In this document: piece after piece, positions 3,410-46,690 of the stretch
How positions within the stretch are numbered: position 1 is the first letter of the stretch
Layout of the letters: the number at the start of each line of letters is the position of its first letter
NCBI GenBank assembly: GCA_025594325.1
Contig: JANHCV010000003.1
Span: 124,001-188,000, forward strand
Direction: 5' to 3'
From: Blastocladiella emersonii ATCC 22665
Taxonomy: Eukaryota; Fungi; Blastocladiomycota
DNA: 64,000 bases
Translations under genes and position numbers: made by a program
The notes under the pieces: model-generated
Told to the model about the DNA's origin: nothing
Database searches by the model: none
What the model saw: the letters and a program-made list of their open reading frames with translations, nothing else

Positions 3410-4660
3410 ATGAAGTCCTCGAACGCGCACACGCTCGCCGTCCTGCTGGCCGCGCTGCTGGTCGCCGTGACCGCCAACGTGGTCGACCTGACGCCCGCCA
3501 ACTTCGACTCGGTCATCGACGGGTCGCGCCACGCGCTCGTCGAGTTCTACGCCCCGTGGTGCGGCCACTGCAAGTCGCTGGCCCCCGTCTACGAGGAGCT
3601 CGCCGCCACCTTCAAGCACGCCTCGAGCAACCTCGTCATCGCCAAGGTCGACGCCAACGAGCACACGTCGCTCGGCGAGCGCTTCAACGTCCAGGGCTTC
3701 CCGACCCTCAAGTGGTTCCCCAAGGGCAGCACCGACCCCTCAGAGTACAACGGCGGCCGCACCCTCGACGACCTCGCCGCCTTCGTCGAGGCCAAGACGT
3801 CGATCCGCTCCAAGCTCGTCAAGGTCCCCTCGGCCGTCACCGTCCTCACCACCGACTCGTTCGACGCCGTCGCCATGGACCCCACCAAGAACGTGCTCGT
3901 CGAGTTTTACGCCCCCTGGTGCGGCCACTGCAAGTGTGCGTATCCGGCTCTCGCTGTGCTCGACCTGACCCACTGCTAACGTGTTGCCCCGACTCCCATT
4001 GACCTGCAACAGCCCTCGCTCCTGTACGCGGCGCCCACCGCTACCACCCGTTCTTGACCGCCCCCTAACCTACAACCCCCCGAATAGACCTACGAGAAGC
4101 TCGCCAAGACCTTCTCCACCGAGGACTCGGTCGTCATCGCCAACCTCGACGCCACGGCCCACCCGGACATTGCCCAGCGCTTCGGCGTCCAGGGCTACCC
4201 GACCATCAAGTTCTTCCCCGCCGTCAAGTCCAAGCAGCCGCTCGACTACGAGGGCGGCCGCTCCGAGGCCGACTTCGTCGACTTCATCAACGAGCAGACC
4301 GGCACCAAGCGCACCCCGGGCGGCAACCTCGACGAGTCGGCCGGCGTCCTGCTCGAGCTGACCGAGTCCGTCAACGCCTTTGTCGCCGCGTCCGACCGCG
4401 CCGCCGAGCTCGCCAAGGCCAAGAAGGCCGCCGCCGCCATCAACGACAAGGCCGCGCCCCTCTACGTCAAGATCATGGAGCGCATCGTCAAGGCCGGCGA
4501 CGCCTACGTCGCCAAGGAGTCGGCCCGCCTCCAGAAGCTCCTCAACGACGACACGGTGCTCCAGGCCAAGAAGGACCTCTTCGTCACCCGCTCCAACATC
4601 CTGCGCGTCTTCGCCGAGGCCCTCGCCCGCGACGCCGGCGCCACCAAGCAGGAGCTGTGA
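3410..4660 (+). CDS. tigA: Protein disulfide isomerase, ERp38/TigA type (2 thioredoxin domains + ERp29-like C-terminus), ER-retention-like KQEL
   Basis: Signal peptide, two APWCGHCK motifs, C-terminal KQEL. Exons 3410-3935, 4013-4023 (11 nt), 4088-4660. Confidence 0.92.
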
Positions 4661-42165: not shown

Positions 42166-43482
42166 ATGGCCCTCGCACTGACCGCCGTCGCCCGCGCCGC
42201 CCTTATCAACCCCGCCGCCCGCCGCCCGGCCCTCGCTCTCTCCGCCACCGCTGCTGCCCGCTCCGCCCTGTCGCTGCGCTACTCTACTACTAGCTCCACC
42301 CCCTCCAAGATGGCGTCCAACACCCCCAACCACAAGCTGTGCATGATTCCGGGCCCCGTCGAGTTCCACGACGACGTGCTGGCGACCATGTCGACGCCGG
42401 CGACGTCGCACGTCGACCCGCACTTCATCGCGCAGTTCGGCGAGTCGATTGAGCTGCTGCGCGACGTGATGATGTGCAAGCGCGGCCAGCCCTTCATCGT
42501 GTCGGGCTCGGGCACGCTCGGGTGGGACATGGTGGCCGCCAACCTGGTCGAGCCCGCCGAGTCCGCGCTCGTCGTCAACACGGGCCTGTTCGGCGACCGG
42601 TTCGGCGAGTGCCTCGAGGTGTACGGCGCCAAGGTCACGCACGTGCACGCGCCCAGCATCGGCATGGCGCCGTCGCTCGACAGCATCGCGGCCGCCATCA
42701 AGGCCGCGCCCGCGCCCTTCAAGGTCATTACCATCACCCACGTCGACACGTCGACGGGCGTGCTCAACAACGTGCCCGCGATCGCGCGCCTCGTGCACGA
42801 GCTGTCGCCCTCGACGCTCGTCATCGTCGACGCCGTGTGCTCGGCCGGCGGCGAGGAGATCGACATGGACGGGTGGGGCATCGACGTGGTGCTGACGGCG
42901 TCGCAGAAGGCGCTCGGCACGCCGCCCGGTCTCGCGATCCTGGTCGCCTCGGAGAAGGCCATGCACGTGTTCCGCGAGCGCAAGGCCCCCGCCACGTCCT
43001 ACTTTGCGTCGTGGGCCAAGTGGACGCCCATCATGCAGGCGTACGAGGCCCGCAAGCCGTCGTACTTTGCCACGCCGGCCGTCCAGCTCGTCATGGCCCT
43101 GCACACGTCGCTCAAGCAGATCGTGGCGCGCCCGCTCGCCGAGCGGTTCGCCCAGCACGTCGCCATCTCGGACCACGTCAAGCAGACGGTCACGGGCTGG
43201 GGCCTCAAGCTCGTCCCGACGTCGCTCGATGTCGCCGCGCACACGCTGACGGCCGTCTACTACCCCGAGGGCGTCGCCGCGGCGGGTCTCCTCGGCGCGC
43301 TGTCGGGCAAGGGCGTCATCATCGCCGGCGGCCTGCACCCCAAGATCGCGTCCACCTACTTCCGCATCGGCCACATGGGCCTCTCGGCCACCCACGAGGA
43401 CTCGCTCGGCTACGTCAAGAAGACGCTCGCCGAGCTCGAGGCCGCCCTCCGCGAGAACGGCTTCGCGCCCAAGCAGGCGTAA
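42166..43482 (+). CDS. AGX1: Alanine:glyoxylate aminotransferase (class V PLP enzyme) with mitochondrial-type leader; unspliced form ends PKQA
   Basis: KLCMIPGP, GSGTLGWD, THVDTSTGVL, VDAVCS, ASQKALG (PLP Lys), FRIGHMG; Arg/Ala/Ser-rich leader before the second ATG at 42310. Confidence 0.93.
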   Translation: MALALTAVARAALINPAARRPALALSATAAARSALSLRYSTTSSTPSKMASNTPNHKLCMIPGPVEFHDDVLATMSTPATSHVDPHFIAQFGESIELLRDVMMCKRGQPFIVSGSGTLGWDMVAANLVEPAESALVVNTGLFGDRFGECLEVYGAKVTHVHAPSIGMAPSLDSIAAAIKAAPAPFKVITITHVDTSTGVLNNVPAIARLVHELSPSTLVIVDAVCSAGGEEIDMDGWGIDVVLTASQKALGTPPGLAILVASEKAMHVFRERKAPATSYFASWAKWTPIMQAYEARKPSYFATPAVQLVMALHTSLKQIVARPLAERFAQHVAISDHVKQTVTGWGLKLVPTSLDVAAHTLTAVYYPEGVAAAGLLGALSGKGVIIAGGLHPKIASTYFRIGHMGLSATHEDSLGYVKKTLAELEAALRENGFAPKQA

Positions 43483-43732
43483 GTACCTTCCCTCTACTAG
43501 CTCTCTCTCGGGCGCGCTAGCCGCCCCTCTACCCTCTCCCTCACCATCTCGTCCACCTGTGTCCATGATTCTGCTCTACAATACGACGTCCCTCCCCACC
43601 CTCTCTCCTTGTGTTGCATCACCTCGCCTCTCTTTCAACGACGCCACACCTCGCTCGACGCGCTTTTCATGCAAACCGGCCGAACCACGTTCGCTGACCC
43701 GCCCCGATCCGCGAATCGCCTTCCTCGTCTAG

Positions 43733-43811
43733 ACCAACGCCGGCCCGGTCCTTCCCGACGTCTTCGGCCGGCGACGCGCCCGTGTCGCTGAACCTGCGCG
43801 CCCGCCTCTGA
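43733..43811 (+). CDS. AGX1: Predicted terminal AGX1 exon encoding a PTS1 (..VSLNLRARL*)
   Basis: Donor GC|GTAAGT at 43479 overlaps the TAA stop; branch GCTGAC at 43693; acceptor CTAG ending 43732; frame gives APTPARSFPTSSAGDAPVSLNLRARL-stop. Confidence 0.7.
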
Positions 43812-43948
43812 TGGCCACGGCCATGGCCACGGCCACCGACCTCGCTCACCTCTTGCACATATCGTATCGTATAACTCATTCGCGCTAGCAGTAGTATAAC
43901 CTATTTCTTTTTATGCTATGCGTCACACACTCTGGCGCCTCCGAGCGA

Positions 43949-46690
43949 CTATGCCGACCCGCCGAGCAGCTGCAGCGCGAGCGCCTCGTCCATGGCGAGC
44001 TTCTTGGCGTCGGGCGCCTCGTCGTCGCCACTCTCGTCGTCTTGGCTGTACTCGTCGCGCGTCCGTTTCCGGAACCCGCGGGTCGGCACCTCGTCCTCGA
44101 ACTCGTCGTCGACGTCCATGTCCTCACCGTCGTGGGGCGACCCGAGCGTGACGACGAACCCGCCATCCTCGTCGTCCTCCTCGTCGTCGTCGCCGCGCAT
44201 CTTGCGCTCCTTGTCCTTGCGCTTCTTCTCGGCGCGCTTCTCGCGGCGCTTCTCCTTGGCGACGGCCTTGTCGGTGACGTCCGTCTCCTTCATCTGGGCT
44301 CGCTGCATCCCCAAAAACTCGCGCTTGGCCTGGTCAATGTCGGTGGTGGCGCGGAACGTGTCCTCGGACTCGAGCGAGTGCACGCGGATCGCGTTGCCGT
44401 CGTCGTCGAACACGAGCTTCTCGGGCGCGGGCAGTGCGTTGCGGGCCTTGGCGCGCTCGCGGAGCACGCGCTTGCGCGAGGGCGCCGAGGAGGGGACCAG
44501 TTTCATGGCGTCGATCACGCCGTCGAGCTCGTGGTTGGTCCGCGCGATCGTGAACAGGTCGTCGTCGTCGTCGCCCGACTTGCGCTGCTTGCGCTGCTTC
44601 TGCTTCTTGGACGACGGCGCGTCGTCGTCGAGGCCGAGAAGTGCCGCGCCCGTCGGCTTCTTCTTGGACACGGCGGTGGCCTCGTCGTCGTCGCTCGAGT
44701 CGTCGCCGCCGAGTAGCTGCTGGGCCTTGCCGCCGCGAGCGCCGGGTTTCCGGACATCGGCGTCATCGTCGTCCGAGTCATCGTCGTCGCTCGAGTCAGC
44801 GAGCGCCTTGGACCGGCGGGCGCGGGCACCGGGACGCGCCTCGTCGTCGTCGTCCGACGCGGCAGCAGCGTCGTCGTCGTCTGAGTCGGACCCGGACCCG
44901 GCGTCGGACACGTCCTCGGACCGGTCAATCAGCTTGTTGTAGTGGGCCGACAGCACGTCCTGGTTCTTGCGCTGGAGCATGCGGTCGACGCGTGTCCGTG
45001 GCCCGGCGGGCTTGCCGTCTTCCTCGCCCTCGGCAGCGGCTTCGGCGTCGCTCTCCTCCTCGGCCGCGGCGGCGCGCGCAGCAGCGCCCGCAGCGAGCTC
45101 CTTCTTGGAGATGAACCGCAGCTTGGGCTTACCGGGGAGCCCGAGGGCCTCGGCGTACTCGTCGAGGGGCAGGCCGACGACGTTGAACACCTCCTTGTTG
45201 GACTGGACGAACATGGACTTGACGTAGGTCACAAAGGCGCGCTGGGCGAGGTACTTGAGCTCGACGTACTGCGTGCACAGGGCCTGGAGCTGCGGCTTGA
45301 TGGACTGGGTCTTGGCCGGGTTGACCTTGATGCGGCGGAGCCCGGGCGCCTTGTCGGCGATGGCCTTGAGCATCCCCTCCTCCTCGGACGGGAGCAGGAA
45401 CATGAGCGCGTTGCCGCCGTCCGTGTACCGCGCGGTGCGGCCGACGCGGTGGATGTACGTCTCGGGCGAGTCGGGCGCGTCGAGCTGCACGACCCAGTTG
45501 ACGGACGGGAAGTCGAGGCCGCGCGCGGCGACATCGGTCGTGAACAGGACGGCGTGCGTGTCCTTGCAGAAGGCCTCGTACACGTCGATGCGCTGGAACT
45601 GCTTCTGGCCGCCGTGCAGGTGGCGCAGCGGGACGCCCGGCTTGAGCTTGCAGAAGGTCTCGAACACGAACCGCACCTGCTTGCACGTCGACAGGAACAC
45701 GATCGACTTGTGCTGCAGGTGCGTCTTGAGGAACGACCACAGCAGGTCGAGCTTGTCGGGCAGCGGCGACACCACGTACGCCTGCGACAGCGACGCCGGG
45801 TTCGCGTCCTGGTGGACTGCCACGTACTCGGGCGTCTGCAGCGACAGCCGCGCGAGGTCGCGCACCGACTTGGTCTGGGTCGCGCTGAACAGCAGCGTCT
45901 GGCGGTGCTTGGGCAGGAAGTCGATGATGGCGTTGATGTCGCGCTCGAAACCCATGTCGAGGATCCGGTCCGCCTCGTCGAGCACCAGCATCTGCAGGTT
46001 GTCGGCGTCGAACCCGGCCGTCTCGTCCATGTGCTGCAGCAGGCGGCCGGGCGTCGCGATCAGAATGTTCATGCGCGACATGCGGTCCTTTTCCTGCTTC
46101 ACGTCCTTGCCGCCGATGACCAGGCCCGCCGAGAAGCTGTGGTGCGCGCCCACCTTGCGCAGCACCTGGAAGATCTGCATCGCCAGCTCGCGCGTCGGCG
46201 ACAGCACCAGCGCGCCGAGCCCGTCCTCGGCCGACCACCGCGCGCGGTGCAGCTTCTCGAGAATCTACATCCCGAAAAGAAAATCGCGTCAGATCGCGTC
46301 GTTTGTGGGTCTCGCATTCGAGAAAACGCGTACCGGAATGACGAACGCGAGCGTCTTGCCGGACCCGGTCTTGGCGGCGCCGAGCACGTCGCGGCCGCAC
46401 AGGGCGAGCGGGAGGGCGGTGCGCTGGACGTCGGTCATGTCGGTGAACCCGGCGTCGGTCAGGCCCTGGACCGTCTTGGTGGAGATGGGCAGGTGCTCGA
46501 ACTGCGTGATGGCGGCGCCCTTGAGCGCGGCCAGGTCCGTCGTCTGCTCCTCGATCTGCTTGAGCTCGTCGAGCTCCGTGTCGCGCCGCTTCTTGCGCGC
46601 GTTCACGTAGGTCGGCTTGGCCTTGCCCTTGCCGCCGCCCTTGCCGCCCTTGCGGAAATGGTGGGACGGCTTGCCTCCCTTTGGCGGCAT
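43949..46690 (-). CDS. DBP4: DEAD-box RNA helicase DBP4/DDX10
   Basis: [50 protein letters not shown]; intron 46333-46265. Confidence 0.96.

What the first reader, a model, noticed from the sequence alone, without database searches (positions are those of the whole stretch)
42166..43811. AGX1 appears triple-targeted: mitochondrial leader, second ATG, and a hidden PTS1 exon reached through a donor overlapping the stop codon
Seen: the ORF ends CAG GCG TAA GT, which contains a perfect donor GC|GTAAGT at 43479. A branch site (GCTGAC, 43693) and acceptor (CTAG, 43732) follow. The spliced frame ends ..VSLNLRARL*. The 254-nt intron is much longer than the usual 50-100 nt here, and retaining it stops translation at once at PKQA. 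The first ATG (42166) adds a 48-aa Arg/Ala/Ser leader before a second ATG (42310). Known: ARL fits the PTS1 consensus; mammalian AGXT is routed to mitochondria or peroxisomes by alternative starts; fungi make cryptic PTS1 isoforms by alternative splicing. Inference: one locus gives mitochondrial, cytosolic and peroxisomal glyoxylate-detoxifying isoforms.
Basis: partly seen in the sequence, partly recalled or inferred. Interest (0 to 1): 0.78.

Follow-up and report, generated by a model that had tools for sequence, protein, structure and literature searches.

The report
AGX1 hidden peroxisome-tag exon
A water-mould gene for a glyoxylate-detoxifying enzyme has a short last exon, missed by the current annotation, that adds a peroxisome address tag, and it also has a mitochondrial leader; relatives share this layout, but no RNA data were available to show whether the tag is switched on and off by splicing.

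Summary
The 438-codon AGX1 ORF (42166-43482) ends GCG TAA GT. GTAAGT (43479), GCTGAC (43693) and the AG at 43731-43732 bound a 254-nt phase-2 intron. The exon 43733-43811 adds 26 residues ending ARL.

Conservation shows the exon is real. Catenaria has the same stop-overlapping donor, a 251-nt intron and a tail ending LRARL. The annotated B. britannica model already splices the homologous intron and ends AKL. One Allomyces paralog carries a continuous tail ending PKL without a leader, and its sister paralog keeps only the leader. Chance gives such a tail in 0.4-2.3% of shuffles per species.

The Arg-rich, acid-free leader and the internal ATG recur in five Blastocladiomycota, and none has an ATG between the two starts.

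Alternative splicing, and so a cytosolic third form, is unproven because no RNA run was listed. Indirect hints exist. GTAAG donors are about 2% of introns in this lineage, where GTRCG is usual. The intron is three to four times the usual length. The genome also holds one canonical U1 and two variant U1 copies matched to GTACGT.

Verdict: this is a new member of a known kind (cryptic PTS1 exon plus mitochondrial leader and second start). The existing gene model lacks the last exon.

The parts
42166..42309 (+). 48-codon N-terminal leader from the first ATG; mitochondrial-presequence-like
   Evidence: It has 6 Arg/Lys, no Asp/Glu, and 71% Ser/Thr/Ala/Leu. Coding log-odds is 0.29 and GC3 0.83, against -0.37 and 0.65 for the open frame just upstream. 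Comparable leaders occur in Catenaria, B. britannica, Sorochytrium and Allomyces paralog A.
42310..42312 (+). Second in-frame ATG, start of a leaderless isoform
   Evidence: Its context aagATGg has A at -3 and G at +4. No ATG in any frame lies between the two starts here or in four relatives (joint chance about 0.02). This Met is the annotated start in Catenaria, B. britannica and Sorochytrium, and in most fungal homologs.
42310..43478 (+). Catalytic core of a class-V aminotransferase (AGX1 type), up to the end of exon 1
   Evidence: Pfam PF00266, E 3.3e-17. Best solved relative is yeast Agx1 2BKW, E 7e-82 over residues 11-380. The SQKAL motif with the PLP lysine codon is at 42907-42909. The gene is single copy in the 32.6-Mb genome.
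43479..43484 (+). Donor GTAAGT overlapping the annotated TAA stop (43480-43482)
   Evidence: The same GTAAGTAC donor over a TAA is found in Catenaria (L003:3661) and B. britannica (L008:275). This donor type is rare in the lineage.
43479..43732 (+). Last intron, 254 nt, phase 2, C/T-rich
   Evidence: A blind intron survey picked it out. It has no coding signal and a 210-nt AG-free run before the acceptor. Homologous introns are 251 nt in Catenaria and 165 nt in B. britannica. Intron sequence is not conserved.
43693..43698 (+). Branch-site candidate GCTGAC, branch A 35 nt before the acceptor AG
   Evidence: 'gctgac' is the commonest branch string in the published B. emersonii intron table, with 17 occurrences.
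43733..43811 (+). Terminal coding exon: 26-residue Pro/Ser/Thr/Ala-rich spacer ending ARL, then TGA at 43809-43811
   Evidence: Among the possible acceptors only this one gives a PTS1 ending.
43800..43808 (+). PTS1 codons GCC CGC CTC (Ala-Arg-Leu)
   Evidence: ARL fits the consensus (S/A/C)-(K/R/H)-L quoted in PMC3338719 and PMC3781343. Orthologous tails end ARL, AKL and PKL.
43812..43948 (+). 3' untranslated region with AT-richer motifs, up to the stop of the convergent DEAD-box helicase gene at 43949
   Evidence: AT-rich, poly(A)-signal-like sequence lies after the last exon, not inside the intron, here and in both relatives. The reading as 3'-end signals is inference.

Best explanation
This is the only AGX1 (alanine:glyoxylate aminotransferase) gene of a Blastocladiella-type fungus, and its true 3' end is a spliced one.

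Gene structure: exon 1 (42166-43478) is joined across a 254-nt phase-2 intron to a 79-nt last exon. That exon adds a flexible 26-residue spacer ending in the peroxisomal tag ARL. The deposited 438-residue model stops inside the donor and lacks this exon.

Routing, as inferred: two signals address the enzyme.
- Translation from ATG 42166 adds a 48-residue mitochondrial presequence. By analogy with mammalian AGT and A. nidulans IdpA, this would override the C-terminal tag.
- Translation from ATG 42310, through a shorter transcript or leaky scanning, gives a leaderless protein that the PTS1 sends to peroxisomes.

I take the spliced form to be the default. Because the donor contains TAA, any unspliced mRNA yields an intact enzyme that simply lacks the tag. 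I put about even odds (0.45) on this being used as a cytosolic or stress-time form.

Shown: the anatomy, its conservation, single copy, the enzyme family, and the presence of peroxisome import machinery. Inferred: use of both starts, import into either organelle, and any regulation of splicing.
For: Anatomy.

Enzyme identity: PF00266; yeast Agx1 2BKW at E 7e-82 and the SQKAL lysine; single copy in the genome.

The exon is conserved.
- Catenaria L003 has a donor over TAA at 3661, an ACTAAC branch, a 251-nt intron, and a tail ending LRARL.
- The B. britannica annotated fragment P0127 splices L008:275-439 and ends RAKL. The same convergent DEAD-box helicase lies downstream there as here.
- Allomyces paralog B in three species has a continuous 37-residue tail ending RPKL and no leader. 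Paralog A has the leader and no tag. A and B are sisters inside Blastocladiales (support 90/87).

Chance: a PTS1 tail arises in 0.4-1.5% of shuffles for the window, 2.3% for Catenaria and 1.7% for B. britannica.

Coding signal: present in exon 2 and the leader, absent from the intron and from the frame upstream of ATG1.

Leaders in five species have 5-6 Arg/Lys and 0-2 acidic residues, and none has an ATG between the two starts.

Pex14 is encoded in the genome.

Precedent for leader dominance and for triple routing: PMC3798809.

Hints of functional retention:
- GTAAG donors are 2 of 105 published B. emersonii introns, against 50 gtacg and 18 gtgcg.
- GTAAGT occurs 14 times in 528 kb of strand here, 0.29 of the number expected.
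- The two inner AGX1 introns of B. britannica use GTGCGC and GTACGC, while its last intron keeps GTAAGTACC.
- The intron is three to four times the modal length.
Against: - There is no transcript evidence of any kind. No RNA run was listed, and no transcript-derived protein of this species is in the collection.
- Two annotations, the window's own P0001 and the Catenaria P0003 model, end at the TAA, although gene finders do this by default.
- No dedicated predictor was available, so the leader is judged by composition only.
- ATG1 has a good context (caaATGg), which argues against heavy leaky scanning and leaves an untested second transcription start as the alternative.
It is also weakened by the shared ancestry of the two Blastocladiella genomes.
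- Sorochytrium and a metagenomic relative lack the exon.
Confidence: 0.8

Rival explanations
1. Splicing of the last intron is a regulated switch, so the locus makes three addressed forms: mitochondrial (ATG1), peroxisomal (ATG2, spliced) and cytosolic (ATG2, intron retained). This is a stronger sub-case of the best explanation, not exclusive of it.
For: - The TAA-bearing GTAAGT donor is a roughly 2% minority type in this lineage, yet it is kept as GTAAGTAC in three species.
- The intron is long for the genome.
- The genome has one canonical U1 fitted to GTAAGT and two variant U1 copies fitted to the usual GTACGT. This intron may therefore depend on a separate, possibly limiting, snRNP.
- B. 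emersonii retains introns under heat and cadmium stress (PMC2773782).
- Many fungal AGX1 proteins have no tag at all, so a cytosolic role is ordinary.
- Allomyces paralog A is a permanent PTS1-less form.
Against: - No RNA data.
- A mitochondrial form does not need the tag removed, so two compartments are served without any alternative splicing.
- Any phase-2 GTAAGT intron reads TAA when retained.
- The donor's rarity is partly an ascertainment effect.
- Only 0.2% of unstressed B. emersonii ESTs kept an intron.
Confidence: 0.42
2. Strictly constitutive splicing. Every mRNA carries the PTS1 exon, only start choice varies (mitochondria or peroxisomes), and the TAA in the donor is an inherited accident. 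The 'hidden' exon is only an annotation error.
For: - The B. britannica annotators modelled the spliced form as the gene.
- Allomyces paralog B has the tail fused in without an intron.
- In Catenaria, where GTAAGT-type hexamers were more frequent than GTACG-type in the 6-kb locus sampled, the donor needs no special explanation.
- Splicing in unstressed B. emersonii is efficient.
Against: - The rare donor type has been kept in two Blastocladiella genomes whose other AGX1 introns use GTRCGC.
- The intron is unusually long in all three species (165-254 nt against a mode of 60-79).
- Allomyces kept a tagless paralog after duplication.
Confidence: 0.4
3. The exon is a relic in this species. The protein ends at PKQA as annotated, and the downstream frame is decaying sequence.
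For: The deposited model is the unspliced ORF. Sorochytrium and Allomyces paralog A do without the exon.
Against: - The donor, branch, first-AG acceptor, open frame, codon bias and a canonical ARL are all intact.
- The gene is single copy, so no other AGX1 could serve peroxisomes.
- The tail sequences differ almost completely between species, yet each keeps the frame and a PTS1.
Confidence: 0.07
4. Chance. A TAA stop happens to be flanked by G and GT, and a downstream frame happens to end in ARL.
For: Conditional chance per species is 0.4-2.3%, which is not negligible over a whole genome scan. A second ORF ending G TAA GT with no PTS1 tail exists at L013:6418.
Against: The same layout occurs at the same codon position in three species, which gives a joint chance near 6e-6 if the three are treated as independent. 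It is also used by independent annotators in one of them.
Confidence: 0.01

Closest known systems
Mammalian alanine:glyoxylate aminotransferase (AGXT), routed to mitochondria and/or peroxisomes by alternative starts (Danpure 1997, as cited in PMC3798809)
   Same: Same enzyme superfamily (human AGT 1H0C, E 2e-29). It has an N-terminal mitochondrial leader, an internal start and a C-terminal PTS1 on one gene, and the leader dominates when present.
   Different: The fungal protein is of the yeast Agx1 subtype (2BKW, E 7e-82). Its tag is a canonical ARL on a 26-residue spacer encoded by a separate last exon, whereas to my knowledge the mammalian tag is a weak KKL at the end of the folded domain. 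Start use here is untested.
Cryptic PTS1 by alternative splicing in fungi: U. maydis GAPDH and Aspergillus PGK (Freitag, Ast and Bolker 2012, cited in PMC9549241 and PMC3798809)
   Same: A short 3' exon supplies a PTS1 to an otherwise non-peroxisomal metabolic enzyme, the layout is conserved among related fungi, and it is invisible in standard gene models.
   Different: The enzyme is different, AGX1, which does not appear among the alternative-splicing examples in the passages retrieved from those two reviews. The phylum is different, an early-diverging one. The gene also has a mitochondrial leader. Expression of both isoforms is unproven here.
A. nidulans IdpA: cytosolic, mitochondrial and peroxisomal forms from one gene (Szewczyk 2001, in PMC3798809)
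   Same: The longer product carries both a mitochondrial leader and a PTS1, and a shorter product lacks the leader. Three compartments are served from one locus.
   Different: IdpA uses two transcription starts only and its cytosolic share comes from incomplete import. Here a retained intron could remove the tag outright.
Pumpkin hydroxypyruvate reductase and Y. lipolytica malate dehydrogenase (Hayashi 1996; Mano 1999; Kabran 2012, in PMC3798809)
   Same: Alternative splicing at the 3' end decides whether the product ends in a PTS1.
   Different: For MDH the review describes two splice variants whose intron sizes differ by four nucleotides, and for HPR it says only light-dependent differential splicing. 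Neither is described as retention of a whole last intron with a stop inside the donor.
M. oryzae peroxisomal AGT1 (PMC3338719)
   Same: A fungal alanine:glyoxylate aminotransferase shown by GFP fusion to sit in peroxisomes, directed by its C-terminal 46 residues.
   Different: Its putative signal is a non-canonical QKA on a continuous C-terminus. The passages read mention no hidden exon and no mitochondrial leader.

Membership tests
Class-V aminotransferase, AGX1 / alanine:glyoxylate aminotransferase | Match to the Aminotran_5 profile over the whole fold | tested here: met
   PF00266 at 63 bits against a cut-off of 21.5, residues 80-391.
Class-V aminotransferase, AGX1 / alanine:glyoxylate aminotransferase | PLP-binding lysine in the Ser-x-Lys motif | tested here: met
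   SQKAL with Lys248, codon 42907-42909. The assignment of this lysine as the PLP site is from my knowledge of yeast Agx1 and human AGT.
Class-V aminotransferase, AGX1 / alanine:glyoxylate aminotransferase | Closest characterised relatives are alanine:glyoxylate aminotransferases | tested here: met
   Yeast Agx1 2BKW at E 7e-82. UniRef names the homologs alanine--glyoxylate transaminase.
Class-V aminotransferase, AGX1 / alanine:glyoxylate aminotransferase | Alanine:glyoxylate transaminase activity | not testable with these tools
   Needs an enzyme assay.
PTS1 peroxisomal matrix protein | Extreme C-terminus fits (S/A/C)-(K/R/H)-(L/M) | tested here: met
   ARL in the spliced frame. The consensus is quoted in PMC3338719 and PMC3781343. 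The feature holds only if the intron is removed.
PTS1 peroxisomal matrix protein | The host has the import machinery | tested here: met
   Pex14_N at 68 bits on G000:C1. PEX5 itself was not searched.
PTS1 peroxisomal matrix protein | PEX5-dependent import of the protein | not testable with these tools
   Needs a GFP-tail fusion or cell fractionation.
Cryptic PTS1 by alternative splicing (Freitag type) | The PTS1 is encoded by a separate 3' exon and absent from the unspliced reading | tested here: met
Cryptic PTS1 by alternative splicing (Freitag type) | The layout is conserved in related species | tested here: met
   Catenaria and B. britannica. Allomyces B has it as a fused tail.
Cryptic PTS1 by alternative splicing (Freitag type) | Both spliced and unspliced (or alternatively spliced) mRNAs are made and translated | not testable with these tools
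Leader plus PTS1 dual-signal genes with two starts (AGXT / IdpA type) | N-terminal extension with mitochondrial-presequence character | tested here: inconclusive
   Composition fits in five species: 5-6 Arg/Lys and 0-2 acidic residues, with coding-like codon usage in the window's leader. No trained predictor or import test was available.
Leader plus PTS1 dual-signal genes with two starts (AGXT / IdpA type) | Conserved in-frame internal start just before the mature domain | tested here: met
   Present in all five Blastocladiomycota and in most leader-bearing homologs. No ATG lies between the starts.
Leader plus PTS1 dual-signal genes with two starts (AGXT / IdpA type) | Two transcript or translation starts actually used | not testable with these tools
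   Needs 5' end mapping or ribosome profiling.

The most novel reading that the evidence does not exclude
Blastocladiella runs two U1 systems. A variant U1 (5' AUACGUACCU, two copies) serves the bulk GTRCGY introns. A single canonical U1 (AUACUUACCU) serves a small class of GTAAGT introns. The AGX1 last intron has been kept in that minor class because its donor doubles as a stop codon. The level or activity of the canonical U1 snRNP would then set how much enzyme carries the peroxisome tag, which would be a splice-site-class-specific switch of organelle targeting.
Probability: 0.15. Interest if true: 0.85.

Novelty: new member of a known kind. Interest (0 to 1): 0.55.

Why it matters
- Annotation. 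The deposited 438-residue protein, and the Catenaria ortholog, lack their last exon and so their peroxisomal tag. Any peroxisome proteome inferred for these fungi from gene models will miss AGX1, and probably other such genes.
- Evolution of targeting. The combination of mitochondrial leader, internal start and PTS1, famous from mammalian AGT and primary hyperoxaluria, is extended to an early-diverging fungal phylum. Allomyces gives a clean natural experiment in which duplication split the two tags between sister genes.
- Splicing. If retention of the intron is regulated, this would be a new enzyme for the cryptic-PTS1 mechanism. It would also be a handle on how a genome with a shifted 5' splice-site consensus treats its few canonical donors.
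- Recurrence in this genome. Together with the earlier MDH note, it suggests that splicing-controlled peroxisomal addressing recurs in this organism.

Tried and rejected
- RNA evidence. The look-up of sequencing runs listed no RNA run and its cap is one, so read laying could not be used.
- Transcript-derived proteins. The cluster of the window's protein has one member. A search with the last 110 residues of exon 1 found no transcript fragment of this species, only the B. britannica piece.
- Stop-codon readthrough. Reading through TAA gives six codons and then TAG, with no PTS1. Rejected.
- Intron sequence conservation. The window and Catenaria introns do not align beyond the donor. Only a loose CACGT-plus-branch resemblance was seen, and it was not pursued.
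- Hidden exon behind Allomyces paralog A's GTAAGG-overlapped stop. No acceptor gives a PTS1 tail.
- Hidden exon in Sorochytrium and in metagenomic P0006. None is present, and in Sorochytrium the next gene is 62 nt away.
- Unbiased donor census. Scans allowing any GT-AG pair were too noisy because antisense frames pass coding filters. The donor statistics therefore rest on hexamer counts, the cleaner short candidates, the published EST-verified table, and two protein-mapped B. britannica introns.
- U6 co-variation. Its ACAGAGA box is canonical.
- Joined spliced protein. Exons were handled by reference only.
- Complex prediction with PEX5. Not attempted, because the tail is under 30 residues and no eukaryotic reference is offered.
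Full report
**Observation.**
- An ORF runs from ATG 42166 to TAA 43480-43482. Its last bases are CAG GCG TAA GT, so a GTAAGT hexamer lies at 43479-43484 across the stop.
- GCTGAC sits at 43693-43698. The AG at 43731-43732 is the first AG after it.
- The interval 43479-43732 is 254 nt and lies in phase 2.
- Read in the spliced phase, 43733-43811 gives 26 residues ending LNLRARL and then TGA.
- A second in-frame ATG is at 42310.
- Of all AG acceptors in the 470 nt before the next gene, only this one yields a PTS1 ending.
- The 210 nt before the acceptor hold no AG at all (52 of 10000 shuffles).

**What the gene is.**
- The product is a class-V aminotransferase (PF00266). Its best solved relative is yeast alanine:glyoxylate aminotransferase Agx1 (2BKW, E 7e-82; human AGT E 2e-29). 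The SQKAL lysine motif is intact.
- The nearest proteins are from Blastocladiomycota: B. britannica 81%, Catenaria 76%, Allomyces 73%.
I did not verify that, but the intron features match published B. emersonii data.
- The gene is single copy in the 32.6-Mb assembly.
- The deposited protein of this genome is the unspliced 438-residue ORF.

**The last exon is real.**
This rests on three relatives.
- In Catenaria (L003) exon 1 ends at 3660 and GTAAGT at 3661 overlaps the annotated TAA. An ACTAAC branch and a TATAG acceptor close a 251-nt phase-2 intron, and the next exon stays open for 47 codons and ends LRARL.
- In B. britannica the gene is split over two contigs. The annotated C-terminal fragment P0127 already uses the homologous intron (L008:275-439, 165 nt, donor GTAAGTACC over a TAA) and ends RAKL. 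The same convergent DEAD-box helicase follows, as in the window.
- In three Allomyces species one paralog (B) has a continuous 37-residue tail ending RPKL and no leader. The other paralog (A) has the leader and ends without a tag.
- A maximum-likelihood tree puts A and B as sisters (support 90/87) inside a fully supported Blastocladiales clade. The duplication is therefore Allomyces-specific and split two signals that the ancestral single gene carried.
- The tails are otherwise unalignable, yet each keeps the frame and a PTS1-type ending.
- Dinucleotide shuffles give a PTS1 tail in 0.4-1.5% of trials for the window, 2.3% for Catenaria and 1.7% for B. britannica.
- Exon 2 shows codon bias in its frame only. 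The intron and the sequence beyond the exon show none.
- Pex14 is encoded in the genome.
- ARL and AKL fit the published consensus.

**The leader.**
- Codons 1-48 have six Arg/Lys, no acidic residue and a coding-like codon score. The open frame just upstream of ATG1 scores as non-coding.
- Comparable in-frame leaders precede the annotated start in Catenaria (59 codons), B. britannica (39) and Sorochytrium (52), and are annotated in Allomyces A.
- None of the five has any ATG between the two starts (joint chance about 0.02). This is compatible with leaky scanning, though ATG1 has a good context and a second transcription start is equally possible.
- Among 120 homologs from early-diverging fungi, many leader-bearing proteins keep this internal Met, and several end directly in PTS1-like tripeptides. 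Dual addressing of AGX1 is therefore probably widespread.

**Is the splicing alternative?**
This could not be tested, because no RNA run was listed.

One correction applies: a phase-2 GTAAGT intron always reads TAA when retained, so the overlap is not by itself a device.

In this lineage, however, the donor is unusual.
- The published EST-verified B. emersonii table has 50 gtacg, 18 gtgcg, 8 gtatg, 5 gtccg, 3 gtgag and only 2 gtaag among 105 introns.
- In 264 kb of this genome GTAAGT occurs 14 times on both strands, 0.29 of the number expected, and none of the clean short introns uses it.
- In B. britannica the two inner AGX1 introns use GTGCGC and GTACGC, while the last keeps GTAAGTACC.
- The intron is also three to four times the modal length.

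These points favour some constraint on the TAA. I put regulated or functional retention at about 0.45.

**Side finding.**
- The genome has exactly one U1 candidate with the canonical 5' end AUACUUACCU, on C8.
- It has two identical copies on C18 with AUACGUACCU, which is fully complementary to the prevailing GUACGU donor.
- U6 keeps ACAGAGA.
- An earlier first-stage note on another window had seen the GTRCGY donors and their mismatch to the canonical U1. The variant copies resolve that mismatch.
- The held literature returned nothing on this.

**Comparison with known systems.**
- The layout combines two known devices. One is the mitochondrial leader plus internal start plus PTS1 of mammalian AGT and A. 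nidulans IdpA. The other is a PTS1 supplied by 3' splicing, as in fungal GAPDH/PGK, Yarrowia MDH and pumpkin HPR.
- Peroxisomal AGT is documented in M. oryzae.
- No paper found in the searches made here describes a hidden PTS1 exon in a fungal AGX1.
- I therefore file it as a new member of a known kind and as an annotation correction.

**Limits.**
- Presequence quality was judged by composition only.

Noticed in passing
G000:C8:523409-523568 (+) = L029:1501-1660; G000:C18:121735-121902 (+) = L030:1501-1668; G000:C18:129326-129493 (-) = L031: There are two kinds of U1 snRNA candidate (Rfam U1, full length, 42-44 bits, below the curated cut-off). One has the canonical 5' end ATACTTACCT. Two copies, identical over the 72 bases matched by the pattern scan, have ATACGTACCT, which pairs perfectly with the GTACGT donors that dominate this genome. 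U6 has the normal ACAGAGA box. No paper on this was found in the held library.
   Followed up: partly
window plus L009-L028 (264 kb of contig C15): The donor consensus of short introns (54-80 nt) is GTRCGY with acceptors such as GTGTAG and the branch GCTGAC. GTAAGT is strongly under-represented (14 hits, 0.29 of the number expected). This matches the published B. emersonii intron table.
   Followed up: partly
L013:6410-6490 (G000:C15:86410-86490): A 639-codon ORF also ends GAG TAA GT, with GTAAGT over the stop. It is followed by the same 15-mer CGTTCGCTGACCCGC as in the AGX1 intron (window 43688-43702) and by CAG/TAG acceptors 63-67 nt on. The spliced tails are 1 or 15 residues and carry no PTS1. 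It may be another unannotated terminal intron.
   Followed up: partly
window 43949-46207 (-); L008:612-3000 (-); L003:5984+: The convergent DEAD-box helicase with a CTE_SPB4 domain next to AGX1 is in the same arrangement in B. britannica. It lies nearby, but rearranged, in Catenaria.
   Followed up: no
proteins P0001-P0120: Across early-diverging fungi many AGX1 homologs carry a long basic N-terminal extension with a retained internal Met. Many also end in PTS1-like tripeptides (SKL, AKL, ARL, ANL, PNL, xKL). Batrachochytrium salamandrivorans and Geosiphon homologs show both features.
   Followed up: partly
L003:2324-2500, L001:3884-4000, L006:1345-1500: The annotated starts of the Catenaria, B. 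britannica and Sorochytrium AGX1 models sit at the second ATG. Each has an unannotated in-frame upstream ATG with a presequence-like leader.
   Followed up: yes
L003:3870-3886 and L008:415-431: The Catenaria and B. britannica last introns share ATCACGTGACTA around the presumed branch point, and the window has CACGTTCGCTGAC. This is possibly just the branch context, or possibly a small conserved element.
   Followed up: no
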